Shown here in pieces: positions 4,200 to 35,228 of a stretch of DNA of 64,000 nucleotides. The DNA lies in the IMG/VR virus record IMGVR_UViG_3300043399_000877, positions 248,001-312,000 of that record; one strand, written 5' to 3'. The notes beneath the pieces were generated by a model, which saw only the letters and a program-made list of their open reading frames with translations, ran no database searches and had not been told where the DNA came from. Numbering within the stretch: position 1 is the first letter of the stretch; each line of letters starts with the position of its first letter. The position numbers and the translations under genes were made by a program.

Positions 4200-4410
4200 A
4201 TTATCATTAAGAGAATTGCAAAAAGAAAGCGCAAGGGCCTTGATGACTATGCAAGCTACAAATAACAATATATGGAAGTTTAACTCCCAAGCACATCATA
4301 ATAGCCAAAATTGGTACTGTGCAGTAATTAATTGGTACGTTGAGCAATATGGTGACTTGCCCAGTCGAGTTGGCCCTGGAAAGGACATAAAGTTAATACA
4401 AGATGTATGA
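4186..4410 (+). CDS. Small hypothetical protein (74 aa), Trp/Asn-rich
   Basis: ORF overlaps both neighbours, as in an operon. No family recognised. Confidence 0.6.
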   Translation: MDLSKLSLRELQKESARALMTMQATNNNIWKFNSQAHHNSQNWYCAVINWYVEQYGDLPSRVGPGKDIKLIQDV

Positions 4411-11054: not shown

Positions 11055-12501
11055 TATACTAATATGCATTGTACCTAAAATTTTTCCAGATGCGCCCACA
11101 GTGGGCCCAGCAGTGTTAAAAGCTCATATTGAATCTGCTGGGTTTTCTTGTGAAGTTGTTGATTTAAACGTAAAATTATACAATGAGTTTAAAAAACACG
11201 GAGATGAAGATCAGTTTTTTGAAAAAGACAGTGCATTCAGATGCCGCGATGTTGAAAAAGTAGATGAAGTTTTCGGAGAAAACTATAAAAAATACAAATA
11301 CGTTTTTGATGAGTGGATTGATTTCTTTAAAGAGAAAAACCCAAAATGGATAGGCTTGAGTTTGTTAACAGTGATGAGCAGTGCTGTTGCAATAAAACTA
11401 AGTAAACTTATTAGAGAACATTTACCAGAAACAAAAATAGTGTGGGGTGGCGCCGAAGTTACAAGAGGCCGAACCATGCAGTATTTTGAAAAGGGTTTAA
11501 TAGATCATTGGATAAGTGGTGACGGGGAAGTTCCCATTGTTAAATTGTTAAACGGTGATTTAGACAATAATGGAATAGATGATCGTCCCCCGTTTCAGTT
11601 AATCAACATAAACGAAGTGTTGGTGCCCAACTATGATGATATAGAATGGAACGAATACCCGTTTATTAATCAACCCAAACCTGCATATATTACAGGAAGT
11701 CGGGGGTGTGTTAAACGCTGTGATTTTTGTAATGTTTATGAAATTTGGCCACAGTATGTTTTTAGAAGCGGTGCGCATATAGCCAATGAAATAATACAAG
11801 TTAAACAGAAGTATGATAGAACTACTTTTAAATTTACAGACAGTTTAATTAATGGTAGTATGAAAGCATTTAGGGAAATGCTGCAAATATTAGCAGATTA
11901 TAATAAAACACGAAAAACAGATGACGAAAAAATAAGATGGCATAGTCAATGGATAGTTAGAAATTTTAGACAAAGCCCTGAAGAGGATTATCGTCTCATG
12001 AAGGAAAGTGGGTGTTACGGTCTTGACGTTGGTGTTGAAAGTTTTAGCCAAAATGTAAGATTTGAGTTGGGGAAAAAATTTACAGACGACGATATGTGGT
12101 GGTGTTTTGAAATGCTACAAAAGTATGAGATACACCATACACTATTAATGTTTGTTGGGCACCCATTTGAAACAGACGCCGATCACCAAATTACTTTGCA
12201 AACTATTAGACAGTTATACGAAAAAGGATATGCTGGAAAAAAGACTGATGAAAAACGGTTAATGTATATTAGTATGGCAAACACTATGATGCTTTCTGAT
12301 GATACTCCAGTATGGAATAAAGTAAAAGATGAACTAGAGTATTGGCATAACGACTGGAATTGGAAATTTCGTGATAACACGCTTGAAGTAAGATTGCGAC
12401 GCCTCGAGGAAGCAAACGATCTGTTATCTGAACTTGCGGGTCAAGAAAGATCTTGGATGGTACGTAAAAAGATTGAGATGATAAAGAAAAGTTTTGGATA
12501 A
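11032..12501 (+). CDS. B12-binding (class B-like) radical SAM enzyme
   Basis: N-terminal cobalamin-domain motifs (PTVGPAVLKA, WIGLS, IVWGG), then SRGCVKRCDFC, FTDSLING, GVES. Confidence 0.88.
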   Translation: MAMTNRLDILICIVPKIFPDAPTVGPAVLKAHIESAGFSCEVVDLNVKLYNEFKKHGDEDQFFEKDSAFRCRDVEKVDEVFGENYKKYKYVFDEWIDFFKEKNPKWIGLSLLTVMSSAVAIKLSKLIREHLPETKIVWGGAEVTRGRTMQYFEKGLIDHWISGDGEVPIVKLLNGDLDNNGIDDRPPFQLININEVLVPNYDDIEWNEYPFINQPKPAYITGSRGCVKRCDFCNVYEIWPQYVFRSGAHIANEIIQVKQKYDRTTFKFTDSLINGSMKAFREMLQILADYNKTRKTDDEKIRWHSQWIVRNFRQSPEEDYRLMKESGCYGLDVGVESFSQNVRFELGKKFTDDDMWWCFEMLQKYEIHHTLLMFVGHPFETDADHQITLQTIRQLYEKGYAGKKTDEKRLMYISMANTMMLSDDTPVWNKVKDELEYWHNDWNWKFRDNTLEVRLRRLEEANDLLSELAGQERSWMVRKKIEMIKKSFG

Positions 12502-19229: not shown

Positions 19230-19276
19230 CCGGATAGGCAAGATACTAGAATAAATATGTTAAATTGGGGATCAAC

Positions 19277-20008
19277 ATGGATAACAAGTTCTTTATACCT
19301 GACAATGTAACAGGTATAGTTATAAAATTGTCAGGTGGTGCTGACAGTTCTATACTATATTATGGGTTATGTAAACACATAGTTGAGAACAATTTAAGTA
19401 TACCTATATATGTAACATCTATGGACACAAATAGAAAACCTTGGTACAGCCATTATGCAAAAAAAGTCATAAATTTTACAAAACAAGAAACTGGAATATC
19501 ACCCGTAGAGCATAGAATTCATTTCTTAGACGGCAACTGGACTATGGATGATTATGTACAAACTCAACATGATTTAATGATGTCAGTTATTGATGACAAA
19601 CTTGCAAATGTGGCGTATAGCGGGTTAACTCAAAATCCAACTAGAAAAGATTTACACAGAACTCGAAAACATAAAGATTTTAACAAAAACGGTTTAAAAT
19701 ATCTTGATGAAAATCTAAACGGAACAGATTCTAGTAGAAATGATCATTCAAATAAAAAAGTAGTAAATTACAACGGGCACTTCATAATGATCAATCCGTT
19801 TATACACAAAACAAAAAAAGAAGTATTTAACTGGTATAAACATTATAATGTACTAGATACTCTTTTTCCATTAACTTATAGTTGTGAAGAATCAGATAAT
19901 GAATACAAGAAGTTAATTAAAGTTGAAGACGGGTTTGCAGAAATGTCGCACTGTGGATTTTGTTGGTTTTGCATGGAACGTATATACGCATTTGGAAGAC
20001 TCGTATGA
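19277..20008 (+). CDS. QueC-like PP-loop ATPase
   Basis: KLSGGADS PP-loop, NPF..TK, TYSC...HCGFCWFCMER Zn site. Confidence 0.8.
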   Translation: MDNKFFIPDNVTGIVIKLSGGADSSILYYGLCKHIVENNLSIPIYVTSMDTNRKPWYSHYAKKVINFTKQETGISPVEHRIHFLDGNWTMDDYVQTQHDLMMSVIDDKLANVAYSGLTQNPTRKDLHRTRKHKDFNKNGLKYLDENLNGTDSSRNDHSNKKVVNYNGHFIMINPFIHKTKKEVFNWYKHYNVLDTLFPLTYSCEESDNEYKKLIKVEDGFAEMSHCGFCWFCMERIYAFGRLV

Positions 20009-22399: not shown

Positions 22400-23464
22400 A
22401 TGCCAATATGTAAAGCACTCTATAACCAAGTATGTGTTGAAATCGGTGGAGTTTATAAACCATGCTGTTCATATGTTGGGGACAGTGGTATATCAGTAAA
22501 CGACATGACCCCAAATGAATTTTTAAAATCTGATTATATAGAAAATATAAGAAAAAACATGGAAGGGGATTTATGGGATTCCGGTTGCGTTGGATGCAAA
22601 GTGCGTAGTGAATCTGGGCTCCACACGTTGAAAGATACCTATGACTTTTATTGTAAATCTGATATAGGTACTTTTGAAATGATTGAAATTTCAGTAAGTA
22701 ACAAGTGTAATAACCAATGCAGAATGTGCGATTCTAGGCACAGTAGTTTATGGCAAAATACTTTGGGTTTTGGTAATTCTCCTAAATCTTATTATGATTT
22801 GCAAGCATTAATGAATAATCTAGACGGCAGTGATATAAAGGTAATAAAATATTTAGGTGGTGAACCATTAATAACTGATGAAATAAATCAAGTCTTCGAT
22901 TTTATCAAAAAAAATAAAGAAAATAAAATTTCATTTTATTTTAATACTAACCTATCAGTACCTCCAGAAAAATATCTTAGCGAATTTGAAAATATAGAAA
23001 AATTTGTGATTGGGTATAGCATTGACGGTGTAGGCGCAACTAATGAATATATAAGAGATGGAAGCAATTGGGACACTGTTGTTAGGAATTTAGATAAATG
23101 GGAAAAATTCTTTGAATCCAGATCCGATCAGAGTGAAAGATACGTCCACACCGTATTACAAGCATACAACTATCATGATATTGAAAATATATATAAGTTT
23201 AGTAGTTCGTATGGGTTAGAGCATTTTACACCTCCTATAATTGCGCCACATGAGTTTACATTAAATGCATTGCCTAAAGAGTATATAGAAAAGTATGCCA
23301 CCAGTAGAACGGCAAAATATGTTGATAACCATTCATATAATGCATCGTTGTACGATAAATTAGTAAAAACAACAATTTATCATGATAAGTTATTTCAAAA
23401 ATCAATAAATAATTTTATACCTGAATTGTATTTTTTAAGTAAGAGCAATAATGATACACCATGA
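22400..23464 (+). CDS. Radical SAM enzyme with N-terminal twitch/SPASM-like cluster
   Basis: IC...PCC...CVGC, then CNNQCRMC, LGGEPL, SIDG. Confidence 0.92.
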   Translation: MPICKALYNQVCVEIGGVYKPCCSYVGDSGISVNDMTPNEFLKSDYIENIRKNMEGDLWDSGCVGCKVRSESGLHTLKDTYDFYCKSDIGTFEMIEISVSNKCNNQCRMCDSRHSSLWQNTLGFGNSPKSYYDLQALMNNLDGSDIKVIKYLGGEPLITDEINQVFDFIKKNKENKISFYFNTNLSVPPEKYLSEFENIEKFVIGYSIDGVGATNEYIRDGSNWDTVVRNLDKWEKFFESRSDQSERYVHTVLQAYNYHDIENIYKFSSSYGLEHFTPPIIAPHEFTLNALPKEYIEKYATSRTAKYVDNHSYNASLYDKLVKTTIYHDKLFQKSINNFIPELYFLSKSNNDTP

Positions 23465-24104
23465 AATATACGAAGGAATAAACTTTAATATATACGACGG
23501 TACGTTGGGTGTTAGTGTAAGTGGTGGCGCAGATAGTGCGCTGGTATTATTCTTTTTATTAAAATTTAATAAAAGAAAAATTCATATATTTACATTTGCA
23601 GATCAGCAAAAACACATGATAAACACTAAATCAGCAATTGATGTGGTAAACACCTGCATACAGCTAACTGGCAATAGTAATTTAGAACATCACATAGATT
23701 ATGGTGAAATAAAAGACATAGATACACTATTTAGAAATCATGATTTGTACTTGCAAAATGGAATAGTAGATTATGTGTATACGGGAATAACAAAAAACCC
23801 ACCAAAAGAAGTGACAGACACTTTTTCAGAGCCAGTGCCGGTAACTATACCACGTGATCCAACTGTGGTACGTGATGTACTATGGGATAATACGTGGTAC
23901 AGACCTTGGACAAATTTAAATAAACGTGATTTATACAATATATACAAACAGCATAACTTGTTAGACACGTTGTTTCCAAAAACAAGGAGTTGTGAATTTT
24001 ACAGTACTGATGTTCAAGAAATGGAAGAATTTATAAAAACTCACAAACAGTGTGGAACTTGTTGGTGGTGTGAAGAACGCAAATGGGGATTTGGAAAAAT
24101 ATAA
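23451..24104 (+). CDS. QueC-like PP-loop ATPase (second copy)
   Basis: SVSGGADS, TRSC...QCGTCWWCEER. Confidence 0.8.
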   Translation: MIHHEIYEGINFNIYDGTLGVSVSGGADSALVLFFLLKFNKRKIHIFTFADQQKHMINTKSAIDVVNTCIQLTGNSNLEHHIDYGEIKDIDTLFRNHDLYLQNGIVDYVYTGITKNPPKEVTDTFSEPVPVTIPRDPTVVRDVLWDNTWYRPWTNLNKRDLYNIYKQHNLLDTLFPKTRSCEFYSTDVQEMEEFIKTHKQCGTCWWCEERKWGFGKI

Positions 24105-24947
24105 ATGACAGTTAAACCTTTTTTTATAAGTTTGCCTAGATCGAGATCTACAATACTTTATGACAGGATGGAAGGATATGCGCTTACAAAGTTGGGGATG
24201 TCTAGGATAGTTGGGCATCCTGAATTCTTTTTAGAATTTTCTCACACTGACATGTATTTTAACACAAAAACACAGCGGTATGATGACTTAGAATTATACC
24301 CTATTCCTAATGATAATAGAATTGATATGCATTTTATATATCCACATGTATTCAATAATTCTATTGATAGAATACGACATAAAATGAATGTGCTCAAACA
24401 TGAAAAAGACAACGGTAGAGATTACTACTTCAAGGGTACTATGAATATTTTTGATAGTTATCAAGAAATAATTGATTTTTTTGCTGACAGAAAAATTATA
24501 ATTACCAGAAGGCATGATATAGTTGAAATGGCAATATCATATCTTTATGCAAGAAATGTAAAGTTGTTCCACGCAAAAGGTAACAATTATGACTATTATA
24601 CTTCTGTACTGGCAAAGGGAACAGAGATTAATGAATCTGAATTAGAAGATATGCCCGAATACATAAAGTATTTGACATTTGTTGATAACGTTGAACATTA
24701 CATAAAAGATAAAAATTACAATTATTGTGTTACATACTATGAAGATATGGAAACTGATGACATGATAAACTCAAAGATAGATGAAATATACGAAACAACT
24801 GAATGGCGAAATAGCGTAAAAACAACGGAGGCATCTACACCTATAAAGGTTGAAAAAAAATATTCAAATGTAATTAAGAATTATACAGACGTTAGATCAC
24901 ATTTAGAAAATATAGTTAAGGAAATAAGAAGTGAAAAACTTTTATGA
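24105..24947 (+). CDS. Sulfotransferase-like protein (PAPS-dependent, Stf0-like)
   Basis: N-terminal SLPRSRST resembles the PRSGST 5'-PSB loop. Also R...S (TRRHDIVEMAIS) and YED. Confidence 0.6.
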   Translation: MTVKPFFISLPRSRSTILYDRMEGYALTKLGMSRIVGHPEFFLEFSHTDMYFNTKTQRYDDLELYPIPNDNRIDMHFIYPHVFNNSIDRIRHKMNVLKHEKDNGRDYYFKGTMNIFDSYQEIIDFFADRKIIITRRHDIVEMAISYLYARNVKLFHAKGNNYDYYTSVLAKGTEINESELEDMPEYIKYLTFVDNVEHYIKDKNYNYCVTYYEDMETDDMINSKIDEIYETTEWRNSVKTTEASTPIKVEKKYSNVIKNYTDVRSHLENIVKEIRSEKLL

Positions 24948-25515
24948 AATTAATGACTTGCCCATTTTGGATTTAACAAGTGAGTACGACAACCTAATAA
25001 AAGAAGGTAGAATATGGTATTCTGAAAGAGAACCAAATCAAATATGTTTAAATTCAACAATCAATAAACTTAATGATATGCATTACGGTGCTGGCAGCTT
25101 GGTGTTTGATTGGGACTTGGTTGGAACACTTGACGATTCGGGAAACGTCATAACGTCGCCGACGTTAAGAGAAACTCCATTAGAGGAAAGTGATTTTACA
25201 GAATTATGCTCTCAGTTTAAAGGAACGTTATTCGAGGATGCATATGTTGCATTACAAAAAAAATACAATCTTGGTAGAGTAAGGATAATGCGATCAAAAC
25301 CTAAAACTTGTTTATCTTGGCATTACGACTATGATGTCAGAGTACATTATCCATTAAAAACGTATGAGGGGTGTTTGATGGTTATAGAAGATGAAGTTTG
25401 CCACCTTACTGCTAATAAATGGTGGTATACAGAAACTCAAAAAATGCATACTGCATTCAACGCAAGTGCCCAGGAGAGAATACATTTAGTAGCTACAGTC
25501 ATTTCTAGTAAGTGA
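24931..25515 (+). CDS. Aspartyl/asparaginyl beta-hydroxylase-like 2OG-Fe(II) oxygenase
   Basis: RVRIM, WHYD, RVHYPL, HTAFN, RIHLV. Confidence 0.8.
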   Translation: MKNFYEINDLPILDLTSEYDNLIKEGRIWYSEREPNQICLNSTINKLNDMHYGAGSLVFDWDLVGTLDDSGNVITSPTLRETPLEESDFTELCSQFKGTLFEDAYVALQKKYNLGRVRIMRSKPKTCLSWHYDYDVRVHYPLKTYEGCLMVIEDEVCHLTANKWWYTETQKMHTAFNASAQERIHLVATVISSK

Positions 25516-25533
25516 TTACTCACTTACTAGAAA
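25502..25533. repeat. Perfect 14-bp inverted repeat at the convergent operon junction
   Basis: TTTCTAGTAAGTGA-TTAC-TCACTTACTAGAAA. Confidence 0.9.
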
Positions 25534-26874
25534 ATTAACGAATTGACATTTTTCGTCAAATTTAAAATCTGATTTCACAAAAATATAATTTCCCAAATAT
25601 GGTTTTGCATATTCTAAAATTATATCATGTGGTAATTCGTCTGGTTCAAGAATACCACAGTTGGGATTGTCATTAATCCAAATCATGGCAGCAAACAGCG
25701 GGGCAACTACTTGAAGACTAGTTGCATTGTTATGGTTTATAAGTGACCGAGTTTCGTCAATACTCAATTGACTTCCTAGCCAATATGAGCCAAAGTCTCC
25801 CATAAACAAAACACCCAACTCATCCATCCCGCCAACAAGGGAATCTGTCATGATCCTCGCAGCATCTTGGCCTTTAAGTCCCCTGCTGACAAGCTCTTCA
25901 AGGCTCTCTACAGCCACGTCGCATGGGTGATATGCGTAATGCACAGTGGGCCTATAATCATCAGTTGACAAGTACTCTGCAATAGATATGGATTCTTGGT
26001 GTGTTATTAGAAATCCAATTATTTCCTTATGCGTGGGAGTCCAAGTCTTTACTTTGGTTGCGCAACCTGGTTTGTTTAAAAAGATAGCACTTTTAGAACC
26101 GTATGCGTGTTCTTCACCCAGCGGCGGAAGACCGGCTTCGTGTGTACCCCATCCAAGTTCTGCTGGAAGTATTCCCTCGGCTATAAATCCGTCGACACTC
26201 CACGTATTCACAAATTGATTAGATTTTTTGGGCTCCAGGTCAAATTGTGAATCTCTTTCTGAAACATGTATCGTCTTAAGTCCTATTCTTTTTGCAAGTT
26301 CCGCCCACTGAGATTTGTTAGATGGTATATCGAATTCTATATTTAATTCATTTGCAATTTTAACTATACCATCTTTTACTATGTGATTTACCATTCCTGG
26401 ATTAGCACCATGCGATACAACCGCAGTTGGTCCATTGGTTTTTGTTTTCCGATAGTTTAACAGTGAGTGTCGTAGTGCATAGTTAGATCGTTCGCTATTT
26501 GAAAGTTTAAAATTGTCAAAAAACCCGACCCACGGCTGGATACAAGTATCAATATAGTTCATATTTCTTGATGAACAGTAATCTATCAAATCCTGTGATG
26601 ACACGTCGACTGTTAAATTAACTATAAAATCACCGGGTAAAGTATGTTCGTCTAAGATTGAAACATAGTTGTCCTTTTGTAGGGTTTTCTCAATACGTGT
26701 TAAATTGTATTGAGAAGTTACGTCGTTATTTCTCAAATCTTCCGATATTATTTTAACATTTGGATTTTTTAAATGCTTGAATAATAGTGGAATAAGAGCC
26801 ACTGAGATGCTTCCCGCTCCCAAAATAACTATATTTTTTTTAAAATTCTCAAATATCGTAGTAATCTTTGTCAT
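25516..26874 (-). CDS. hss: Homospermidine synthase
   Basis: ILGAGSI, NLTVDVSS, SNYALR, HGANPG, NTWSVDGF..EG..PAELGWGTHE, YRPTVHYAY, NATSLQV. Confidence 0.93.
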   Translation of the reverse strand: MTKITTIFENFKKNIVILGAGSISVALIPLLFKHLKNPNVKIISEDLRNNDVTSQYNLTRIEKTLQKDNYVSILDEHTLPGDFIVNLTVDVSSQDLIDYCSSRNMNYIDTCIQPWVGFFDNFKLSNSERSNYALRHSLLNYRKTKTNGPTAVVSHGANPGMVNHIVKDGIVKIANELNIEFDIPSNKSQWAELAKRIGLKTIHVSERDSQFDLEPKKSNQFVNTWSVDGFIAEGILPAELGWGTHEAGLPPLGEEHAYGSKSAIFLNKPGCATKVKTWTPTHKEIIGFLITHQESISIAEYLSTDDYRPTVHYAYHPCDVAVESLEELVSRGLKGQDAARIMTDSLVGGMDELGVLFMGDFGSYWLGSQLSIDETRSLINHNNATSLQVVAPLFAAMIWINDNPNCGILEPDELPHDIILEYAKPYLGNYIFVKSDFKFDEKCQFVNFLVSE

Positions 26875-28117
26875 CTTCTTTAAATCCTCTCGCTAAGAAG
26901 TCGTTAGTAGTTGTTCTTATAACTTGCCAATTCGCAAATGATTTATCAGTTACGATATCTTTTATAGGATGAATAAATTGGCTCATGGGTTTTTTACGCC
27001 AGTCAATATCTTGTATTGTGGCGATAGTTAATTCATGAAGTTCTTTGTTATGGTGTTTAAATAATGCTTCTTTAACAAACTCATATCCAGTTACTTTTTC
27101 GTAAAAATTTAAATGTTTTGAACCATATTTCATACTTATACGCCGTTTAAAATCGTAGTCAACAGTAGTGGTGTTCAACACTTCTGGTATTGAAATATAA
27201 GAAAACACTTGTTCGGGGCTATACATAAAAAAATCATAAACGCATACGTTATTAGTTAAATGCACCCATGTGGGGGCTGACAGACCTATTGAATACGAGC
27301 AATCTCCTATACACACTTCATTTTTTGAATTCATCTTCATTTCTACTTGATCAGACGCCATAATTGGAACGCCGCCTATCGAGTTTATGTATTCTATCAT
27401 GTATTGCTGTGTATAAAGATATGGTAGTAAAAAATAGGTTTCGTAAATTCCTTTTATAAAATAGTCCCTGTGCCGATTGTCATAAAGGTCATTTAAAATG
27501 TAAACATCTTTTGTTCTCAGTGTCAAATCAAATCGTTTACATAAATCCACAGCAGTTTTTATATCGTGTTCGTTTAACACCTCATCATTGTGTTTATATA
27601 CCATAGTAAATGGTATAAAATCTACTCCCGCTTCTATAAAAGCCAATGCCATGAGTTCTGAATCTAAACCACCGCTTAGGCATAGGTAGATATCACCGTA
27701 TCTATTTTTAATGTCAACAGCACTCTTTTTGCATTCGTCCCACCAACTTCCAATGTTTTCAGTTTCGGGAATTTTAAATTTTTCTATAAATGGTAATTCT
27801 GGTATTTTTGGAAGTGCTGTAAGCCCGTACCCAAACTCCAAATGTGAATTTTTTGAAAATCTGCAAATATTGGGTGATTTGAAATTTTTGTTTACTAGGT
27901 AATAGTTGCAAATTTCAGAACCCACCATCACCTTTACTGCCTTGTGCGAATCTGTTTTTTTAATAGTTATGGATTCATAAGGGTCACAAACCTTATACGG
28001 TATACTGGAGAGATTGTATTTGCCAGGCGGGACATAGACAGCGGGGTGTGGTATCAGTGGCTTCTTGAATTGTTTGTAAAGAAAATTCTCCACATCTGAA
28101 ATGTACAATTTTGACAT
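26849..28117 (-). CDS. PP-loop (asparagine-synthetase-like) adenine nucleotide alpha-hydrolase
   Basis: LCLSGGLDSE PP-loop. Confidence 0.6.
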   Translation of the reverse strand: MSKLYISDVENFLYKQFKKPLIPHPAVYVPPGKYNLSSIPYKVCDPYESITIKKTDSHKAVKVMVGSEICNYYLVNKNFKSPNICRFSKNSHLEFGYGLTALPKIPELPFIEKFKIPETENIGSWWDECKKSAVDIKNRYGDIYLCLSGGLDSELMALAFIEAGVDFIPFTMVYKHNDEVLNEHDIKTAVDLCKRFDLTLRTKDVYILNDLYDNRHRDYFIKGIYETYFLLPYLYTQQYMIEYINSIGGVPIMASDQVEMKMNSKNEVCIGDCSYSIGLSAPTWVHLTNNVCVYDFFMYSPEQVFSYISIPEVLNTTTVDYDFKRRISMKYGSKHLNFYEKVTGYEFVKEALFKHHNKELHELTIATIQDIDWRKKPMSQFIHPIKDIVTDKSFANWQVIRTTTNDFLARGFKEDDKDYYDI

Positions 28118-29503
28118 TTATTCTACGTTGTTTACTAATTCTTGTCTTTTTATTTTTCCGTTATAAGATACTGGAATTCTTTTTATTTTAACAAACTTAC
28201 ACTCATAAATCAAGTAGTTTTTTTTCAAAATGTTCAATATTTCAGGATACAATTGTTCGGCAACATTCAAGCATAGTACAACTATTTCTTCATTTTTTTG
28301 ACTAACCAACACATCAATATTAAGTTGTTCTTTTATTTTACGTTCTATGGTGTGTGGAAACAACATGGTATTTTTCACAGTTATGGCGTCTTTTTCACGG
28401 CCCATCAATACCAAATCATTATTTTTTGTAAGATATCCATAATCCCCAGTGTTAAACCAGCCATCGATCGACAGCGGGGTAATTCCATTTTGTGGAGTAT
28501 AGTAACCTTTCGCGATAGTGGGGCCTGACAAATGCACAACACCCTCAACGTTGTTAAACGCATCATTTTTTAGAAATGTTAGATTTAACGAGTCTATTAT
28601 TTTTCCAACTCCTTCTTCGTAACCATTGTTTATGCTTATAGTGGCTGTAGTTTCAGTCATACCATAACCATTTACTAACGGTAATTTAAAAAAGTCTGTT
28701 ATAAACTCGTGGTCTTCTTTTTTAATAGAATCTCCACCATAAGAAATGTATCTTATGCTTTTTGCATTAAACTTTTTTTCTTTCATAATAGTGGTAAGTC
28801 TAACCAATCCTACAGGTGTAAACGAAACCATAGAGATGTTATATTTTTTAAAATCTTTTAACTGAGACATACTAAATTTGTTGCTAACATAAATGCATGC
28901 CTCTGAAAATATAATACCTAGCGACAAGTTTAAACCAAAAACAAATGTGGCTGGTAATATGAGATACAATACGTCGTTACTTGATACATTTCGGTTTTTT
29001 TTGGTAAGTGCTGCTCCGTGTAACAAATTGGAATCTGTTAGAAATGCTATTTTTATTTTTCCACTGGTTCCTGATGTGTGCAGCATTATTCCCTCTTCTT
29101 GGAGAGATGGATCAACAGTTGTATTAATTTTAGCAAATTTAAAATTTTCTAACTTATCAAATTTAGCATCTAACAACAGTTTACTTTTGGAAGTTGTAAA
29201 AATAAAATTTGGAAGAGAACTATGTAGAATACTGTCTAATTCAGAGTCAGTTATGTTCTCGTTCACCAGTATCGGAATAGCACCGATTTTTTTAAGAGCA
29301 AAAAATAAAACAAAAAAATCTATCGAGTTACCACCGATGTACATAACTTTGTGGAATTTTTTAATACCGACGCTGTCAAGCGTAACAGAAAGGTCGTCAA
29401 CATGTGTATAAAAATCGAAATACGTTAGGACTCTTTTCGAGTCAATTAACGCTTTTGATAAAAGATTCTTTTTATTTTCCAATAAGTCATATACACGATT
29501 CAT
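28118..29503 (-). CDS. ANL-superfamily adenylate-forming enzyme (acyl-CoA ligase-like)
   Basis: HTSGTSGKIK, GYGMTET, GWFNTGDYG, GREKD, NGKIKR. Confidence 0.9.
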   Translation of the reverse strand: MNRVYDLLENKKNLLSKALIDSKRVLTYFDFYTHVDDLSVTLDSVGIKKFHKVMYIGGNSIDFFVLFFALKKIGAIPILVNENITDSELDSILHSSLPNFIFTTSKSKLLLDAKFDKLENFKFAKINTTVDPSLQEEGIMLHTSGTSGKIKIAFLTDSNLLHGAALTKKNRNVSSNDVLYLILPATFVFGLNLSLGIIFSEACIYVSNKFSMSQLKDFKKYNISMVSFTPVGLVRLTTIMKEKKFNAKSIRYISYGGDSIKKEDHEFITDFFKLPLVNGYGMTETTATISINNGYEEGVGKIIDSLNLTFLKNDAFNNVEGVVHLSGPTIAKGYYTPQNGITPLSIDGWFNTGDYGYLTKNNDLVLMGREKDAITVKNTMLFPHTIERKIKEQLNIDVLVSQKNEEIVVLCLNVAEQLYPEILNILKKNYLIYECKFVKIKRIPVSYNGKIKRQELVNNVE

Positions 29504-30069
29504 TCTTCTAACATTTTCCATTCATCAACAGTTATAGTGTCGAAAGGCAACGTCGATCCATTAAAAGATTTAAACATTACTTTTTGATAAGCTGATTTTT
29601 TAAATGATGTGGGAACTACCCGGATCATATTTTCCATTATAACCCAGTCATGATAGAACTCAAGTTTGCTTTTTGCTTTTTTGAAATATAATTCTGACTT
29701 GTAGTGTTCTCTTGAATTAAACACGATAGATATGTCGTCTTTGTGTTTATTCACTTGATGTGGTACAATATACATTGGATTGTAAAAATCATATATTTTA
29801 TTTCTAAATTTTGGATTTACAAATGTTCTATTAGAACTTCTGTATATTCCCTGACCCCATCCCGGCCTAGAATACAGTCCACTAAAACACACTATTTCAT
29901 CATCTTCATTAGTAAGTAAGTCAAAAGAAAGATGGTTTTTCAAATCCATCTTTTCATAAGTATAGTTTTCTGCACGTTTGTCATCCACAGCCGATAGCAT
30001 ATCAAACATCTTTTTAAGCGAGGTGCTGTCTGTCACCTCGCCATGTGATACAACATTTACAATTTTCAT
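29500..30069 (-). CDS. GNAT-like acyltransferase (tentative)
   Basis: IVCFSGL strand and RTFVNPKFR motif-A-like segment. Confidence 0.45.
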   Translation of the reverse strand: MKIVNVVSHGEVTDSTSLKKMFDMLSAVDDKRAENYTYEKMDLKNHLSFDLLTNEDDEIVCFSGLYSRPGWGQGIYRSSNRTFVNPKFRNKIYDFYNPMYIVPHQVNKHKDDISIVFNSREHYKSELYFKKAKSKLEFYHDWVIMENMIRVVPTSFKKSAYQKVMFKSFNGSTLPFDTITVDEWKMLEE

Positions 30070-31202
30070 TTTAATACTACTACTTTTAATTTATCAAAAC
30101 CGTTAAATTGTGTAGAATACACACTGGTATATGCACCAGTATTGTGTATTAGTATTTTGTCCCCTGCCTTGACTTTAGACGGAAGCTTTGGTTTATAGCG
30201 CTCGTATAGAATGTCACCACTGTGTAATGTTGGTCCAGCGACAATAAACTCTTCCGATTCTCCTGTTACGTTTGGGACAGACAGTCCATATTTGAATACT
30301 TCGCCATCTGTGCTGTATAGACCTCCAAAGCGGCCAATATTTAAATACAACCATCTATGAGAATCATTGTCGTCTTTTTTACTAGCTAAAATGACCTCAG
30401 CTGCAATTATACCGCAATTTGCAACCATTGCCCGACCAGGCTCGGCTATCAAGTGTTCGACGGTTCCAAATTTTTGGGTTATTGTGTTTTTTAGTACCCG
30501 GCAATACTCTGGAATTTCGGTTATAGCTTCATCATATTCAGAAGGGAAGCCGCCACCTATGTTGAGTAAATTCATGGTATGACCGTATTCTTTAGCAGTA
30601 TTCCATAGGTCAGAAATAGTGTCTAAACTTTCGAACCATTGTTGTGGATGCAGGGTCTGCGACCCTATATGAAAACTTAAACCAACAATTTTAACGTTTA
30701 ACGTTTTACTTTTTTCAAGTATTGACAGTGCCATGTTTGGACTGCATCCAAATTTTTTACTAAGTGGGCGTTTTGCTCCAGTATCTCCTAGAAGTACTCT
30801 CAAAAAAACATTACCGCCGGGAGCATAATTTGATATTTTTTCTACTTCTTCCACAGCGTCAGCAGCAAACAAGTTCACTCCCATCTTGTGTGCATACTTT
30901 ACATCTCGTATAGTTTTTATGGTACTTCCATAACTTATTGATGAAGGAGACGCCCCTGCTTCTAAACACATTTTTATTTCGTTAGCACTCGCAGCGTCAA
31001 AATTACTGCCAAGAGCTACCAGAGTTTTAAGAACTTCTTTGTTCGGATTTGCTTTTATAGCATAGTGAATTTTAAAATTGGGGAGATTATTTTTAAAAAC
31101 TTCAAAGTTTTCTTTTACTTTATCTAAATCTAAAATAAGGGTGGGTTTTTTAAAAGTTTTGTCTAATGCGTATTTGTGAAGTTTTTCCATCTTACTATCC
31201 AT
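30066..31202 (-). CDS. Ornithine/lysine/arginine decarboxylase, fold-type III PLP
   Basis: YAIKANP, FDAAS, KKFG, FHIGSQ, NIGGGFP, EPGR, GAY. The exact start is uncertain (31226 GTG, 31202 ATG or 31190 ATG). Confidence 0.92.
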   Translation of the reverse strand: MDSKMEKLHKYALDKTFKKPTLILDLDKVKENFEVFKNNLPNFKIHYAIKANPNKEVLKTLVALGSNFDAASANEIKMCLEAGASPSSISYGSTIKTIRDVKYAHKMGVNLFAADAVEEVEKISNYAPGGNVFLRVLLGDTGAKRPLSKKFGCSPNMALSILEKSKTLNVKIVGLSFHIGSQTLHPQQWFESLDTISDLWNTAKEYGHTMNLLNIGGGFPSEYDEAITEIPEYCRVLKNTITQKFGTVEHLIAEPGRAMVANCGIIAAEVILASKKDDNDSHRWLYLNIGRFGGLYSTDGEVFKYGLSVPNVTGESEEFIVAGPTLHSGDILYERYKPKLPSKVKAGDKILIHNTGAYTSVYSTQFNGFDKLKVVVLK

Positions 31203-31242
31203 GTTGGGTGGGTGTTTATAGCCCACCCTTCATAGATATTTA

Positions 31243-32358
31243 TTATGACGCAGCTACCCCAGTGTCCAAGTTGATCCAACCACCATTTTGGTATCCTTCA
31301 AACTTGTTGTTTGTAGTGTTGTATATAACCATTCCATTTACTGGAGTTAGTGCATCTCTCTGGACTGTGGTCAAGTTTCCAAATTGTACAAAACCCGATG
31401 CTTTTACGTTACCCCTCACATCGAGTTTTTCAGAAGGAGTAAACGTGCCTACGCCTAAGTTTGAATTCTTGGAAAAAACAACATATGTTGACTCGTCAAA
31501 AGTGACACCATACTGACCGTATGCTATGAATATACCACCGTTGTCAGCACCGATTGTTGCCTTTGTTGAACTACCCTCGGCGTCGTGTTTTTCAAAATCA
31601 AGTCTTCCATATAGCATTGAGTCGTCAACAACTCCAGTCTGGTGTCTTTGGAGTTTAATAGTTGACAAATTGTTATTGCCTTTTATGATTACTTTGGTTA
31701 AACTGGAGTCATCGTTGTCTAAAATTAATGATTCTGTAAAATTAATTAGTCCAACGTTTACTGAATTGTTTGAAGAATCTACTATAATAGAGCTGTCTGC
31801 ACCAACAATGTTTATATTATACGAACCGCCACTTACGATCCCGACATTAGTAAGCAAACTGCCGTCACCTATAAATTTTCCATAAATTTCATTAGTAGCA
31901 GAATTTACTATAATAGAACTGTCATCGCCAAAGACTGAACCACGCAGGCTTCCGGTCAAATCTCCAACAAAGTTTCCAGTAACCGTATTTGTATCACGGT
32001 TTAAAATGATACTGCTATCAGCGCCAACCACGTTTATGCTGTAAAATCCACCATCAACTATGTCACTGACATTTGGTAAATTAACAAGCTGGCTACCATC
32101 ACCGACAAATTTGGTAGCAGTTACTATCCCAGTGATAGTTATGTCACCGGTTCCAGTAATATCATAATTGTTTAAATTCATGTTCCTCGTAAGGACATCT
32201 GGAGACTCGGTTAAGTCTCCGCTTATTAGTATGCCACCAAGAGTTACACCGTCGCCCACAAATAAAGATTTTGTGTCGGTTGTGTATACAAGTTCGCCTT
32301 CTGCAAATATGACTGCCTGTCTTTCAAGGTCAGTTCCACGTCGCAATCTTAAAGCCAT
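31243..32358 (-). CDS. Virion structural/fibre protein with Mtd_N-like N-terminus and internal GxDSSII repeats
   Basis: MALRLRRGT...AEGEL.YTTDTK.LFVGDG. Three G[AD]DSSII repeats. C-terminal NGMVIYNTTNNKFEGY. Confidence 0.75.
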   Translation of the reverse strand: MALRLRRGTDLERQAVIFAEGELVYTTDTKSLFVGDGVTLGGILISGDLTESPDVLTRNMNLNNYDITGTGDITITGIVTATKFVGDGSQLVNLPNVSDIVDGGFYSINVVGADSSIILNRDTNTVTGNFVGDLTGSLRGSVFGDDSSIIVNSATNEIYGKFIGDGSLLTNVGIVSGGSYNINIVGADSSIIVDSSNNSVNVGLINFTESLILDNDDSSLTKVIIKGNNNLSTIKLQRHQTGVVDDSMLYGRLDFEKHDAEGSSTKATIGADNGGIFIAYGQYGVTFDESTYVVFSKNSNLGVGTFTPSEKLDVRGNVKASGFVQFGNLTTVQRDALTPVNGMVIYNTTNNKFEGYQNGGWINLDTGVAAS

Positions 32359-33679: not shown

Positions 33680-33970
33680 TTAGTATTTCAAATATGGACA
33701 AGCTAAAAGAAAATAACTCAAGTCTTTGCTATTTTCAAAAGCTATGTTTGTTGAATATTTAACTTTGCCGCCGCCAAATCCTTTGAAAGACGGATCGAGT
33801 TTTGATCCGATAAAATATCGGCCAGTTGTGTGTTCATCTATCCATGATTGTAACGCTCTGCTCATATTGTAAGTTAAGTCAACATTCACAGACTCAAAAT
33901 GAGGCGGGCAAAATTTTGCCCGCCTCATTCCAAAAACGTTAAGTGGATTTATTTTTATCTTTTTATCCAT
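33680..33970 (-). CDS. Hypothetical phage protein
   Basis: ATG overlaps the end of the VWA gene. Confidence 0.65.
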   Translation of the reverse strand: MDKKIKINPLNVFGMRRAKFCPPHFESVNVDLTYNMSRALQSWIDEHTTGRYFIGSKLDPSFKGFGGGKVKYSTNIAFENSKDLSYFLLACPYLKY

Positions 33971-35228
33971 GCTTTTCGTCATAATGTGCTGTAACACCAA
34001 ACGGTGCTTGAAGGTTCTTGTCGCGGTTACTGTGGATGATAAACACAGTGTCGCAGTAGTTTTCGTCACCCCAACTTCCAAAAGGATATCCGTCGGTAAA
34101 CATGATAAACTTCTTGGGCTGGATGTCGTGATTTTTCATGTATTCCCAGTTACAGTCAAAGTCAGTACCACCACCGCCGTGGATCTGATAATCCATCAAC
34201 TCGTTTCCGCCGTCAGCAGTAAAGTCCTGCTCATTATATACCCGAGTATCAAAACACCACAGCTTAATGCGATAATCTTTATACTCGTCCATAATGCCTT
34301 TGACTTCGCTCAAGAAGTCTTTTGCCTGATCGTTACCAATAGAACCGCTCATGTCAATGCTTACGGCAATATCGATAGTCTCATCAAACTGCATACCCGG
34401 CAGCACAGCGCCCATATGCCAACCTTTGCGGTTAGGACGAGCAAACGTATAGTCGCTCTTAATGGTGCTCTGGATTTGCTGACGCAGCAATTGACGCCAG
34501 TTCATCTTGGGCTCGGTCAGTTCCTTGATCAGTCGCTGCACACCTGCCGGAGTGTTGCCAGCACCAGCAGCTTGCGAAGCTTGAATCATGGCTTCCTTGA
34601 TCTCGTCACGGATCTTTTGCAGTTCTTCCTTGCTATAACGCGGACGCCCTTTACCCTTGCCATCCTTGTCACCATCACCGTCACCATCACCATCGTCACC
34701 CCAGTCGAGGTGCTCGTCAAGCAAATCACCGAGTTCGTCAATGTTGATCTTCTTAGCATTTTTAAACAGGTCGTCATAAACTGCTTCACTGCTCCAGCCT
34801 TCATACTTGAAGTCTTGGAAGCAATCAACCAGTGTGGGCTTCTGTCCGATGCGGTCACGAACCAGCATGTTGTTGACGATGTAGTCAGCTGCAATGTTAT
34901 ACAGCTTGGGGTCACGATCTTCACGACGAGTCAAGTGGTCAAAAACACAGTGCAGGATTTCGTGAGCAATAACAAACTCAATCTCTTTGTTGTTCATTGC
35001 GTTGAAAAACTGCGTGTTGTAGTACAAATGACGTCCGTCAGTCGCAGCAGTCGTGCACCAATCGTCGCATTCTTGAACACGAAGACGGGTTGCCATGTTA
35101 CCGAAGAACGGATGCTTTAGCAGAAGACCAATACGTGCAGTAACCACACGTTCGTGGACATCTGCTCGCATACGCTCGAGTTCTTCTTTGCTGAGTTGCT
35201 TGGGCTGATACTTGGGCTTCTTTGCCAT
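33963..35228 (-). CDS. Zincin metallopeptidase plus VWA domain protein (MoxR partner, DUF2201-like)
   Basis: TAATDG, HEILH zincin motif, IDMSGS MIDAS, GGGGTDF, FTDG. Confidence 0.9.
   Translation of the reverse strand: MAKKPKYQPKQLSKEELERMRADVHERVVTARIGLLLKHPFFGNMATRLRVQECDDWCTTAATDGRHLYYNTQFFNAMNNKEIEFVIAHEILHCVFDHLTRREDRDPKLYNIAADYIVNNMLVRDRIGQKPTLVDCFQDFKYEGWSSEAVYDDLFKNAKKINIDELGDLLDEHLDWGDDGDGDGDGDKDGKGKGRPRYSKEELQKIRDEIKEAMIQASQAAGAGNTPAGVQRLIKELTEPKMNWRQLLRQQIQSTIKSDYTFARPNRKGWHMGAVLPGMQFDETIDIAVSIDMSGSIGNDQAKDFLSEVKGIMDEYKDYRIKLWCFDTRVYNEQDFTADGGNELMDYQIHGGGGTDFDCNWEYMKNHDIQPKKFIMFTDGYPFGSWGDENYCDTVFIIHSNRDKNLQAPFGVTAHYDEKHG

What the first reader, a model, noticed from the sequence alone, without database searches (positions are those of the whole stretch)
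25516..31233. Five-gene polyamine and amide-ligation operon facing the radical SAM island
Seen: decarboxylase, GNAT-like protein, ANL adenylating enzyme, PP-loop ligase and homospermidine synthase form a tight operon behind one ATAAATA motif. Known: ODC plus HSS give putrescine and then homospermidine (chloroviruses also encode such enzymes), ANL and PP-loop enzymes form amides, and phage phiW-14 attaches putrescine to thymine. Inference: the operon makes an acylated polyamine conjugate rather than free polyamine, possibly attached to DNA, glycan or protein, or supplied to the adjacent island.
Basis: partly seen in the sequence, partly recalled or inferred. Interest (0 to 1): 0.72.

Follow-up and report, generated by a model that had tools for sequence, protein, structure and literature searches.

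The report
Phage homospermidine-conjugate operon with altered decarboxylase
A freshwater jumbo phage carries a tightly packed five-gene operon that almost certainly makes the polyamine homospermidine and probably joins it to something through an amide bond, but its "ornithine decarboxylase" has lost the residues a normal one needs, and only three of the five genes are conserved across related phages.

Summary
The five genes are real, on the minus strand at 25516-31226, overlapping or abutting, and each is under strong purifying selection (dN/dS 0.05-0.09).

**What each gene is**
- The homospermidine synthase (HSS) is solid: E 4e-109 to solved HSS, with all eight catalytic and binding residues present.
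- The 189-aa protein has a GNAT fold (predicted structure only; no Pfam match).
- The 422-aa protein is a PP-loop enzyme of the asparagine-synthetase-B branch and has no glutaminase domain.
- The ANL enzyme keeps its core motifs.

**New findings**
- The decarboxylase is not a standard ODC. Its catalytic Cys-Asp pair is Leu-His in every member of this phage clade, against 113 of 113 nearest homologues that keep Cys-Asp.
- Across about 12 related loci the constant core is GNAT-PP-loop-HSS, always beside an Asp/Asn-hydroxylase-like oxygenase and the radical SAM island.
- The decarboxylase and ANL are a lineage-specific add-on. A 330-kb relative lacks both in the operon and carries a canonical ODC 237 kb away.
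- 5-hmdU DNA kinase, aGPT-Pplase3 (control uninformative) and TGT/DpdA were not found.

**Reading**
This is a homospermidine amide-conjugate pathway. The acceptor (small molecule, peptide, protein or glycan) is unknown. I rate it a new variant of a known kind (phage polyamine genes).

The parts
31237..31243 (-). ATAAATA upstream element (T4-late-promoter-like), overlapping the stop codon of the tail-fibre-like gene
   Evidence: Genome-wide, 57% of its 99 copies lie within 60 nt upstream of a same-strand gene start, against 5-16% for permuted 7-mers of the same composition and 22-30% for the two that overlap the motif. It is not conserved at this spot in relatives.
31200..31234 (-). Stable RNA hairpin (7-bp GC-rich inner stem plus 4-bp outer stem) between the motif and the first gene; the outer stem pairs with the first ATG (31202)
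   Evidence: -14.7 kcal/mol, z -3.99. Hairpins of unrelated sequence sit at the same place in L022, L006 and L016 (z about -4 each).
30066..31190 (-). Alanine-racemase-fold PLP decarboxylase of the ODC/LDC group with a remodelled active site (Leu-His instead of Cys-Asp). Lineage-specific accessory gene.
   Evidence: Pfam and PDB matches. Motif change. Nine positions invariant in all 113 nearest homologues carry clade-specific replacements. Monophyletic clade with a 0.69 stem branch. dN/dS 0.064. Only copy in the genome.
29500..30069 (-). GNAT-fold protein of a phage-specific family with no Pfam model. Core gene.
   Evidence: Model pLDDT 90. Foldseek and VIA GNAT matches. Nearest structural clusters are viral hypothetical proteins, TM 0.72-0.78. 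The family has 215 cluster representatives and no Pfam match.
28118..29521 (-). ANL (acyl/aryl-CoA ligase-type) adenylating enzyme, nearest to MenE/acyl-CoA ligases but below every curated cut-off. Lineage-specific accessory gene.
   Evidence: Core motifs conserved in window, L022, L003 and L006; the GYGxTE pattern was not matched in L005. No homologue in the 330-kb relative G001.
26849..28117 (-). PP-loop ATP pyrophosphatase of the asparagine-synthetase-B branch (carboxylate-adenylating amide synthetase). It has no glutaminase domain or N-terminal Cys, and an N-terminal beta-rich domain of about 80-95 residues with no detected relative. Core gene.
   Evidence: SGGxDSE invariant. Model pLDDT 81. 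Foldseek. AFDB stand-alone Asn-synthetase-domain cluster E 4e-13. VIA Z 14.0, 13.7, 12.3, 12.0 and 10.8 to ASNS, AsnB, beta-lactam synthetase, carbapenam synthetase and TsnB9, then 9.9 or less.
25516..26874 (-). Bacterial-type homospermidine synthase. Core gene.
   Evidence: E 3.7e-109 to PDB 2ph5. N158, E206, W225, E233, H292, E294, Y313 and D351 match BvHSS N162, E210, W229, E237, H296, E298, Y323 and D361.
24931..25515 (+). Asp/Asn beta-hydroxylase-like cupin oxygenase, convergent and abutting the HSS stop codon. Probable member of the same functional unit.
   Evidence: Pfam PF05118, 4.7e-11. A homologue lies next to HSS in types C and D. A remote homologue (x286) lies inside type-B operons (hhalign 77%, E 2e-5, HxD...H retained). 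Homologues also lie beside distant GNAT-like (L015) and PP-loop (L010) family members.

Best explanation
This is a probably late-transcribed operon of a freshwater T4-superfamily jumbo phage (381,886 bp) that builds an amide conjugate of homospermidine.

**Shown by sequence and fold**
- The last gene is a bona fide bacterial-type homospermidine synthase, so putrescine (from the host, or from a phage enzyme in some relatives) is condensed to sym-homospermidine.
- The gene before it is an AsnB-type PP-loop enzyme. This is the branch whose solved members adenylate a carboxylate and capture a nitrogen nucleophile. It has no glutaminase domain to generate ammonia.
- A phage-specific GNAT-fold protein and an Asp/Asn-hydroxylase-like oxygenase always accompany these two.

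**Inferred**
- The PP-loop enzyme adenylates a carboxylate and homospermidine (or a derivative) is the nucleophile, giving an N-substituted amide.
- The GNAT-fold protein acylates a remaining amine.
- The oxygenase hydroxylates the acid or aspartyl partner.
- In the window's sub-lineage two genes were added together. One is an ANL enzyme that activates a further carboxylic acid. The other is a copy of the phage ODC whose cation-binding acidic residues and catalytic Cys were replaced. That copy most likely decarboxylates an amino acid whose side chain is already acylated or amidated (neutral or anionic) rather than free ornithine.

The acceptor (small molecule, ribosomal peptide, virion protein or glycan) is not identified.
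For: - HSS identity and intact active site.
- PP-loop fold ranks with ASNS, AsnB, beta-lactam synthetase, carbapenam synthetase and TsnB9, well above other PP-loop classes. The protein begins MSK..., so it has no N-terminal Cys.
- GNAT fold.
- GNAT-PP-loop-HSS linkage is kept in four architectures across about 12 loci, at 44-90% identity for the GNAT and PP-loop proteins and 38-86% for HSS.
- An AspHyd-like oxygenase is always adjacent or internal.
- The decarboxylase and ANL are both present in types A and B and both absent in type C. The relative G001 has a canonical Cys-Asp ODC elsewhere and no ANL.
- The Leu-His clade is monophyletic on a long stem branch but under purifying selection (dN/dS 0.064). 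E305S and D335H remove negative charge and W153R adds positive charge.
- The genes overlap and carry a T4-late-like motif upstream.
- Precedents: Motura hss-gss cluster (PMC9992855); AS-like enzymes acting on peptide carboxylates and depending on prior Asp hydroxylation (PMC13060819).
Against: - No substrate is identified for any of the three middle enzymes.
- The GNAT-fold protein lacks the canonical R/Q-x-x-G-x-G/A CoA-pyrophosphate motif. Its beta4-alpha3 loop is longer and Arg-rich, so the acyl donor is uncertain.
- The decarboxylase could instead be catalytically impaired or regulatory.
- Adjacency to HSS is the only link between the PP-loop enzyme and a polyamine nucleophile. Distant PP-loop homologues (L010) occur without HSS.
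- No transcript data exist.
- The complex prediction for GNAT plus PP-loop gave no answer.
Confidence: 0.45

Rival explanations
1. The operon only supplies free polyamine. HSS (with the decarboxylase acting as an ODC/LDC) raises homospermidine for DNA condensation, packaging or translation late in infection. The GNAT-fold protein merely N-acetylates polyamines to buffer them, and ANL and the PP-loop enzyme serve unrelated functions.
For: Free homospermidine production is the demonstrated role of viral HSS in PBCV-1, phiRSL1 and giant viruses, and phages encode polyamine N-acetyltransferases (PMC9992855). A late-type upstream motif fits a packaging role. SpeG-type enzymes appear among the GNAT fold matches.
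Against: The PP-loop and GNAT genes are translationally coupled to hss, or closely spaced with it, and co-conserved with it in every relative, including ones that have lost or never had the decarboxylase and ANL. The decarboxylase lacks the ODC catalytic Cys and the distal-amine-binding Asp. The GNAT matches are generic (TM about 0.5) and not specific to SpeG.
Confidence: 0.2
2. HSS is a neighbour, not a partner. The PP-loop, GNAT-fold, AspHyd-like, ANL and decarboxylase genes work with the adjacent radical SAM island on a substrate that contains no polyamine (for example a ribosomal peptide, cofactor or sugar), and HSS is a separate auxiliary gene parked at the island's edge.
For: Distant PP-loop paralogues sit with AspHyd-like and fatty-acid-desaturase-family genes but without HSS (L010). 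A distant GNAT-like member sits beside an AspHyd-like gene without HSS on a short contig (L015). The operon and island share one low-GC compositional block, 0.34 against 0.419 for the genome.
Against: Within the clade, the PP-loop and HSS genes overlap by about 26 nt (23 nt in L016; 56 nt in L009). This linkage holds down to 38-45% identity (L009). The PP-loop enzyme has no ammonia-generating domain, so an amine co-substrate made next door is the economical reading.
Confidence: 0.2
3. The polyamine is attached to phage DNA or RNA bases, either as in phiW-14 (alpha-putrescinylthymine) or by TilS-like chemistry in which a PP-loop enzyme adenylates a base carbonyl and an amine displaces AMP.
For: PP-loop enzymes such as TilS attach amines to cytidine, and TilS/MesJ appear among the lower fold matches (Z 8-9). 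Phage thymidine hypermodification clusters combine PLP decarboxylases, radical SAM enzymes and acetyltransferases (PMC8989533). A thymidylate-synthase-family gene is present.
Against: No 5-hmdU DNA kinase (PF18723), no aGPT-Pplase3 (PF18746; the control did not ring, so this is weak) and no TGT/DpdA (PF01702) were found in a genome estimated 100% complete. The ThyA match scores as a canonical thymidylate synthase (338 bits). The PP-loop fold groups with AsnB-type carboxylate activators, not with TilS.
Confidence: 0.05

Closest known systems
Phage and virus homospermidine synthases (Ralstonia phage phiRSL1, Achromobacter phage Motura, chlorovirus PBCV-1) and the Motura hss-gss cluster
   Same: Bacterial-type HSS encoded by a large phage: 37-38% identity to the phiRSL1 and Motura HSS. 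In Motura, hss sits beside a polyamine amide ligase, suggesting a homospermidine conjugate (PMC9992855).
   Different: Here the ligase is an AsnB-type PP-loop enzyme, not an ATP-grasp glutathionylspermidine synthetase. A GNAT-fold protein, an AspHyd-like oxygenase, an ANL enzyme and a remodelled decarboxylase are added. The locus abuts a radical SAM island. tblastn of the PP-loop protein found no cultured phage with a homologue.
Asparagine synthetase B family amide-forming enzymes (AsnB, beta-lactam synthetase, carbapenam synthetase, TsnB9, lasso cyclases, the peptide C-terminal amidating and nitrile-forming enzyme PesC, AsnO of the NAGGN pathway)
   Same: Same synthetase-domain fold with a PP-loop (Z 10.8-14). 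Family members use nucleophiles other than glutamine-derived ammonia. Some act with an Asp hydroxylase (PesC) or with a GNAT enzyme (AsnO-Ngg) (PMC13060819 and its reference 56).
   Different: There is no N-terminal Ntn glutaminase domain. Instead there is a beta-rich domain of about 80-95 residues with no detected relative. Sequence similarity to Pfam Asn_synthase is undetectable. The substrates are unknown.
Alanine-racemase-fold basic amino acid decarboxylases (ODC, L/ODC of Vibrio vulnificus 2plj, PBCV-1 ADC)
   Same: Full-length similarity (E 1e-60 to 2plj). The PLP lysine, the GGG loop, EPGR and the C-terminal GAYT/FNGF motifs are retained.
   Different: The catalytic Cys and the adjacent Asp of the GPT-C-D-S-x-D motif are Leu and His. 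W153R, E305S and other changes occur at sites invariant in 113 nearest homologues. From memory, unverified here: the siderophore-pathway decarboxylases SbnH and AcsE, which act on already-acylated amino acids, are a functional analogy.
Hydroxamate/NIS siderophore logic (DesA-D, Rhb): decarboxylase + acyl-transferase (GNAT-fold) + ATP-dependent amide ligase acting on diamines
   Same: The same kinds of chemistry are assembled around a diamine or polyamine. This is recalled from general knowledge and was not tested here.
   Different: Neither an IucA/IucC-type synthetase nor an N-hydroxylase turned up among the genes annotated (IucA/IucC families were not specifically searched). The ligases are of the PP-loop and ANL types. 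The genes are viral and probably late-expressed.

Membership tests
Bacterial homospermidine synthase (EC 2.5.1.44) | Full-length similarity to solved HSS enzymes | tested here: met
   E 3.7e-109 to 2ph5 and about 1e-106 to BvHSS entries, covering residues 9-437.
Bacterial homospermidine synthase (EC 2.5.1.44) | Catalytic and binding residues Asn162, Glu210, Trp229, Glu237, His296, Glu298, Tyr323, Asp361 (BvHSS numbering; PMC4725965) | tested here: met
   N158, E206, W225, E233, H292, E294, Y313 and D351 sit in the conserved motifs at a constant offset.
Bacterial homospermidine synthase (EC 2.5.1.44) | Formation of homospermidine from putrescine | not testable with these tools
   Needs expression and LC-MS.
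Ornithine decarboxylase (alanine-racemase fold, group IV) | PLP-binding Lys, Gly-rich phosphate loop, EPGR and the overall two-domain architecture | tested here: met
   Pfam PF02784 6.6e-58 and PF00278. The motifs are visible in alignments to 2plj, 5gjm and 2nv9.
Ornithine decarboxylase (alanine-racemase fold, group IV) | Catalytic Cys (Cys360, T. brucei numbering) in the GP(T/S)CD(S/G)xD motif | tested here: not met
   The motif reads GPTLHS(G/A)D in the window and in all clade members found: 6 in the alignment, 7 by motif count. Cys is present in 113 of 113 nearest homologues and in all four PDB homologues aligned.
Ornithine decarboxylase (alanine-racemase fold, group IV) | Acidic residues binding the distal amino group (Asp361, and Asp332 or its equivalent) | tested here: not met
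   The Asp361 position is His. A Glu invariant in the nearest family (position 305) is Ser. The mapping of Asp332 itself is uncertain, because the nearest Cys-Asp family also lacks it.
GNAT acyltransferases | GNAT fold (mixed beta-sheet with a V-shaped cleft) | tested here: met
   Predicted model pLDDT 90. 224 Foldseek PDB hits at E<=1e-3, all top-listed ones GNATs. VIA Z up to 10.3, with 96 chains at Z>=8.
GNAT acyltransferases | Sequence-family membership and the R/Q-x-x-G-x-G/A CoA pyrophosphate-binding motif after beta4 | tested here: not met
   No Pfam, NCBIfam or PHROG hit. The beta4-alpha3 loop is longer and Arg/Asn-rich (invariant R77, N80, R81, R89) without the glycines.
ANL adenylating enzymes | Core motifs A3 (TSGTSGxxK), A5 (GYGxTE), A7 (TGD), A8 hinge (GRxxD) and A10 Lys | tested here: met
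   All are present in the window and conserved in L022, L003 and L006; the GYGxTE pattern was not matched in L005. Pfam 6.7e-44. No equivalog cut-off is reached, so the substrate is unassigned.
PP-loop ATP pyrophosphatases, asparagine synthetase B branch | SGGxDS PP-loop and the synthetase-domain fold | tested here: met
   SGGLDSE is invariant in 14 family members. VIA Z 14.0 (ASNS), 13.7 (AsnB), 12.3, 12.0 and 10.8, with other PP-loop classes at 9.9 or less. AFDB Asn-synthetase-domain cluster E 4e-13.
PP-loop ATP pyrophosphatases, asparagine synthetase B branch | N-terminal Cys Ntn-glutaminase domain | tested here: not met
   The protein starts MSKLY. Residues 1 to about 80 are unaligned to any AsnB-type structure.
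Thymidine hypermodification system (phiW-14 / M6 / ViI type) | 5-hmdU DNA kinase and an aGPT-Pplase (amino-acid/diamine:DNA transferase) | tested here: not met
   PF18723: no match. PF18746: no match, but that control rang nowhere. Pplase clades 1 and 2 were not searched.
7-deazaguanine DNA modification | TGT/DpdA transglycosylase | tested here: not met
   PF01702 is absent in G000 while it rings in 14 of 14 control genomes.
RiPP biosynthetic cluster | A precursor peptide gene next to the modifying enzymes | tested here: inconclusive
   The only intergenic small ORF is 4186-4410 (74 aa), and it has no recognisable leader or core features. It was not examined in relatives.

The most novel reading that the evidence does not exclude
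The AsnB-type enzyme ligates homospermidine onto a (beta-hydroxy)aspartyl side chain or a C-terminal carboxylate of a ribosomal peptide or virion protein that is matured by the adjacent island of eight N_Twi radical SAM paralogues. That would give a polyamine-tailed peptide or structural protein, a modification not described for any virus. In the window's lineage, the Leu-His decarboxylase and the ANL enzyme would further trim and acylate it.
Probability: 0.15. Interest if true: 0.9.

Novelty: new variant of a known kind. Interest (0 to 1): 0.66.

Why it matters
Phage polyamine genes have so far been read as boosting or sequestering free spermidine or homospermidine. This locus points to something else: a clade of abundant freshwater jumbo phages has fixed an HSS to an amide-forming enzyme set made of families with no cellular annotation, beside one of the densest radical SAM gene arrays seen in a virus.

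It also offers a natural experiment in enzyme evolution. A phage ODC was moved into the operon and lost its catalytic Cys and its cation-binding acids, yet stayed under strong purifying selection.

Identifying the product would assign functions to two uncharacterised phage protein families, a GNAT-fold family with about 215 cluster representatives and an AsnB-type family. It could also reveal a new polyamine natural product or macromolecular modification.

Tried and rejected
- **Near-identical DNA.** A search of cultured phages found nothing. tblastn of the PP-loop protein against phages found nothing. The search for related loci with the single PP-loop protein found no viral locus.
- **Broad GNAT alignment.** A4 was too diverse for the search for related loci in either collection.
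- **Distant GNAT-like members.** Context look-ups for P0156 and P0172 returned short contigs. Only the L015 AspHyd adjacency was usable.
- **Pfam on distant GNAT-like members, including longer fusions.** No family, apart from one weak glycosyltransferase hit.
- **Complex prediction, GNAT-fold plus PP-loop proteins.** No answer; it counts neither for nor against binding.
- **Sigma-70 promoter and intrinsic terminator scan of 24.5-33 kb.** Counts did not exceed shuffles.
- **Public RNA runs.** None holds the locus.
- **Atlas feature search with the PP-loop N-terminal domain.** No usable hit.
- **Literature searches.** Searches combining radical SAM, jumbo/huge phage and polyamine, and a search for 'twitch domain-containing radical SAM', found nothing on this system.
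- **The 286-aa gene of type-B operons.** I considered that it was a copy of the window's 280-aa gene and rejected this (BLASTP: no similarity). It is instead a remote AspHyd-like cupin.
- **The decarboxylase as a decaying pseudogene.** Rejected: full length in all relatives, dN/dS 0.064.

Full report
**Where the locus lies**

The window is bases 248,001-312,000 of a 381,886-bp IMG/VR virus record that CheckV rates 100% complete. The only public runs that hold the locus are freshwater and retting metagenomes. The DNA polymerase at 51761-54427 is T4-type family B. Its nearest cultured relatives are Sinorhizobium phage Phosso, Agrobacterium phage Atu_ph07 and the Rak2/121Q-like jumbo phages, at 44-50% identity.

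The finding sits at the right-hand edge of the only low-GC stretch of the genome. That stretch covers genome 215-280 kb at GC 0.31-0.36, against a genome mean of 0.419. It also holds the plus-strand radical SAM island, which has eight N_Twi_rSAM paralogues above the NCBIfam cut-off, a B12-radical SAM enzyme, further radical SAM genes, QueC-like PP-loop proteins and a UDP-glucose dehydrogenase.

**The observation**

Five minus-strand ORFs occupy 25516-31226. Their junctions are a 4-nt overlap, a 22-nt overlap, an abutment and a 26-nt overlap.

| Gene | Coordinates | Evidence |
|---|---|---|
| Orn/DAP/Arg decarboxylase | 30066-31190 | Pfam 6.6e-58 |
| GNAT-fold protein | 29500-30069 | no Pfam, NCBIfam or PHROG family; model pLDDT 90; 224 Foldseek PDB hits at E<=1e-3, all top-listed ones GNATs; VIA Z up to 10.3 |
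| ANL enzyme | 28118-29521 | Pfam 6.7e-44; A3, A5, A7, A8 and A10 motifs present |
| PP-loop enzyme | 26849-28117 | no family match, but invariant SGGxDSE; AsnB-type fold |
| Homospermidine synthase | 25516-26874 | saccharopine-dehydrogenase-type domains; E 3.7e-109 to PDB 2ph5 |

For the GNAT-fold protein, the closest structural clusters are viral hypothetical proteins (TM 0.72-0.78).

For the PP-loop protein, the model (pLDDT 81) aligns best with human ASNS (Z 14.0), E. coli AsnB (13.7), beta-lactam synthetase (12.3), carbapenam synthetase (12.0) and the hydroxyamidotransferase TsnB9 (10.8). Every other PP-loop class scores 9.9 or less.

The ATAAATA motif is at 31237-31243, overlapping the stop of the upstream Mtd_N tail-fibre-like gene, and there is no second copy inside the operon. 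Genome-wide the heptamer is a genuine upstream element. Of 99 copies, 58 are intergenic in a genome that is 89% coding, and 56 lie within 60 nt upstream of a same-strand gene start. Permutations of the same composition give 5-16%, and 22-30% for the two that overlap the motif. Upstream of the minus-strand genes it is followed 20-35 nt later by a Shine-Dalgarno sequence and an ATG. It resembles the T4 late promoter TATAAATA, a comparison I make from general knowledge.

The motif is not conserved at this position even in the closest relative, L022, which reads ATAACTA there. What is conserved is a stable hairpin just before the first operon gene. It is present with unrelated sequences in four architectures, at z about -4 each. 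In the window its outer stem pairs with the ATG at 31202. Together with the 374-aa length of the relatives, this favours 31190 as the real start.

**The homospermidine synthase is sound**

P0004 aligns over residues 9-437 with the Legionella and Blastochloris enzymes. The residues that Krossa et al. list as conserved and catalytic are N162, E210, W229, E237, H296, E298, Y323 and D361 (PMC4725965). They are all present at a constant offset: N158, E206, W225, E233, H292, E294, Y313 and D351. Among cultured phages only phiRSL1 and Motura have an HSS.

**The decarboxylase is not a standard ODC**

Its best solved relative is the Vibrio vulnificus lysine/ornithine decarboxylase (E 1e-60), and the PLP-binding elements are intact. 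The motif that reads GP(T/S)-C-D-(S/G)-x-D in every aligned solved homologue reads GPT-L-H-S-(G/A)-D here. The same is true of every member of this phage clade.

The nearest family, at about 50% identity and about 375 aa, has Cys-Asp in 113 of 113 sequences. The clade also carries fixed replacements at other positions that are invariant in that family:
- N101S
- W153R, just before the KFG motif
- E305S, in the segment after the G-R-F-G-G motif
- I311F
- T369V

(All.)

The Leu-His clade is monophyletic (100/100 support) on a stem branch of 0.69 substitutions per site. Even so, window versus L022 gives dN/dS 0.064. G000 has no second decarboxylase of this fold.

E305S and D335H remove negative charge, W153R adds positive charge, and the general-acid Cys is lost. 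I infer that the substrate no longer presents a free cationic side-chain amine. From memory, C360 mutants of T. brucei ODC shift towards decarboxylation-dependent transamination. I could not find that paper in the library, so this is only a lead.

The PP-loop and GNAT-fold families are each confined to 11-14 clusters among 5.8 billion proteins by word-seeded search. Their contigs show four architectures. In the layouts below, ODC* is the Leu-His decarboxylase, PP the PP-loop enzyme, S8 a subtilase, x286 a 286-aa protein, FA-desaturase a fatty-acid desaturase family gene, and | marks the switch to the opposite strand.

| Type | Loci | Layout |
|---|---|---|
| A | window, L022 | Mtd - ODC* - GNAT - ANL - PP - HSS \| AspHyd ... 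radical SAM |
| B | L003-L008, L018, L019 | Mtd - (S8 protease) - ODC* - GNAT - ANL - x286 - PP - HSS - nitroreductase \| radical SAM |
| C | L002, L016, L017, L020 and the 105-kb contig | Mtd - GNAT - PP - HSS \| AspHyd ... radical SAM |
| D | L009, 44-45% identity | GNAT - FA-desaturase - PP - HSS \| AspHyd - QueC-like |

In the 330-kb type-C phage G001, a canonical Cys-Asp ODC (P0076) lies 237 kb from the operon and there is no ANL homologue.

So GNAT and PP-loop are always linked to hss. The decarboxylase and ANL come and go together in types A-C, and the decarboxylase's active-site remodelling coincides with its residence in the operon.

The type-B extra gene x286 is a remote Asp/Asn-hydroxylase-like cupin (hhalign 77%, E 2e-5, HxD...H retained; hint). 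An oxygenase of that kind therefore accompanies every architecture. AspHyd-like genes also flank a distant GNAT-like member (L015) and distant PP-loop paralogues (L010). An exhaustive profile search shows that the GNAT-like family is larger than the word-seeded search suggested, with 215 cluster representatives, but it has no Pfam model.

**Mechanism**

What the evidence shows: the HSS is genuine; there is a carboxylate-adenylating amide synthetase fold without a glutaminase domain; there is a GNAT fold; there is a competent ANL; and there is a decarboxylase with an altered pocket.

What I infer:
- Homospermidine made by the last gene is the nitrogen nucleophile for the acyl-adenylate made by the PP-loop enzyme encoded immediately upstream, whose reading frame overlaps hss.
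- The GNAT-fold protein and the oxygenase tailor the partner.
- In types A and B, ANL plus the Leu-His decarboxylase add an activated acid and decarboxylate an amino acid whose side chain is already derivatised.

Both archetypes of the constant partners act on an aspartyl side chain: AsnB on the beta-carboxylate and Asp/Asn hydroxylase on C-beta. A recent RiPP pathway shows an AS-like enzyme that requires prior Asp hydroxylation (PMC13060819). An aspartyl acceptor, free or peptidyl, is therefore a reasonable guess, but it is only a guess. The Motura hss-gss cluster is the nearest published analogue (PMC9992855).

**Alternatives tested**

- DNA hypermodification by the known routes is not supported. 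There is no 5-hmdU DNA kinase, no aGPT-Pplase3 (the control was uninformative) and no TGT/DpdA. The ThyA-family gene scores like a canonical thymidylate synthase.
- A free-polyamine-only role and a 'neighbour, not partner' role for HSS remain possible. They are listed as rivals.
- Physical association of the GNAT and PP-loop proteins could not be assessed.
- No transcript data exist.

**Verdict**

- The unit is a three-gene core plus an oxygenase.
- The 'ODC' is a neofunctionalised or otherwise altered enzyme.
- The product is probably a homospermidine amide whose acceptor is unknown.

This is a new variant of a known kind (virus-encoded polyamine metabolism). The interest lies in the altered decarboxylase, the two unannotated phage enzyme families and the constant pairing with the radical SAM island.

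Noticed in passing
window 175-25515 (+), continuing upstream to about genome 215 kb: Radical SAM island. Eight N_Twi_rSAM (NF033640) paralogues score above cut-off in the genome: seven in the window and one at genome 241296-242687. None of 14 control genomes reaches the cut-off. The island also holds a B12-binding radical SAM enzyme (11032-12501), further radical SAM genes, two QueC-like PP-loop proteins (19265-20008, 23451-24104), a methyltransferase-like gene and a UDP-glucose/GDP-mannose dehydrogenase (175-1419). It is conserved next to the operon in all relatives.
   Followed up: partly
genome 215-280 kb (window 1 to about 32000): This is the only part of the 382-kb genome with GC below 0.36 (0.31-0.36 against a mean of 0.419). 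The operon (0.349) and the radical SAM island form one compositional block.
   Followed up: partly
window 167, 9628, 19251, 31243, 32394, 37190, 56948, 59093 and others: ATAAATA is a genome-wide upstream element: 57% of its 99 copies lie within 60 nt upstream of a gene start. It resembles the T4 late promoter, and it also precedes genes of the radical SAM island.
   Followed up: yes
window 25515/25516: The HSS gene (minus strand) and the AspHyd-like gene (plus strand) are convergent and their stop codons abut with no spacer, leaving no room for terminators.
   Followed up: no
L003:9144-10004, L005:4597-5457, L006:11970-12830: The extra 286-aa gene inside type-B operons is a remote Asp/Asn-hydroxylase-like cupin with HxD...H retained. 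Type-B operons also end with a nitroreductase-family gene and are preceded by a subtilase (Peptidase_S8). All three are absent from the window's genome.
   Followed up: partly
L009:1833-2594 and L010:4650-5459: A fatty-acid desaturase/hydroxylase family gene sits between the GNAT-like and PP-loop genes in the most divergent relative. Another sits near distant PP-loop paralogues with three AspHyd-like genes and no HSS.
   Followed up: no
window 33963-35228 (-): HNH endonuclease (phrog_1314, E 3e-120) in a local GC 0.49 patch, with a long antisense ORF (33969-35120). It may be a mobile homing endonuclease insertion.
   Followed up: no
window 4186-4410 (+): A 74-codon ORF fills the only sizeable intergenic gap of the radical SAM island. 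It has no recognisable features and was not checked in relatives.
   Followed up: no
L007:10552-11899 and L007:7439-8805: In one metagenome assembly the ANL and S8 protease genes are each split into two ORFs. This could be an assembly or sequencing error, or real decay.
   Followed up: no
G001 (330,024-bp relative) 279105-280235: A canonical Cys-Asp ODC of about 375 aa is encoded as a stand-alone gene. Many of its close homologues lie on 250-370 kb contigs, which suggests ODC is a common auxiliary gene in this jumbo-phage group.
   Followed up: partly
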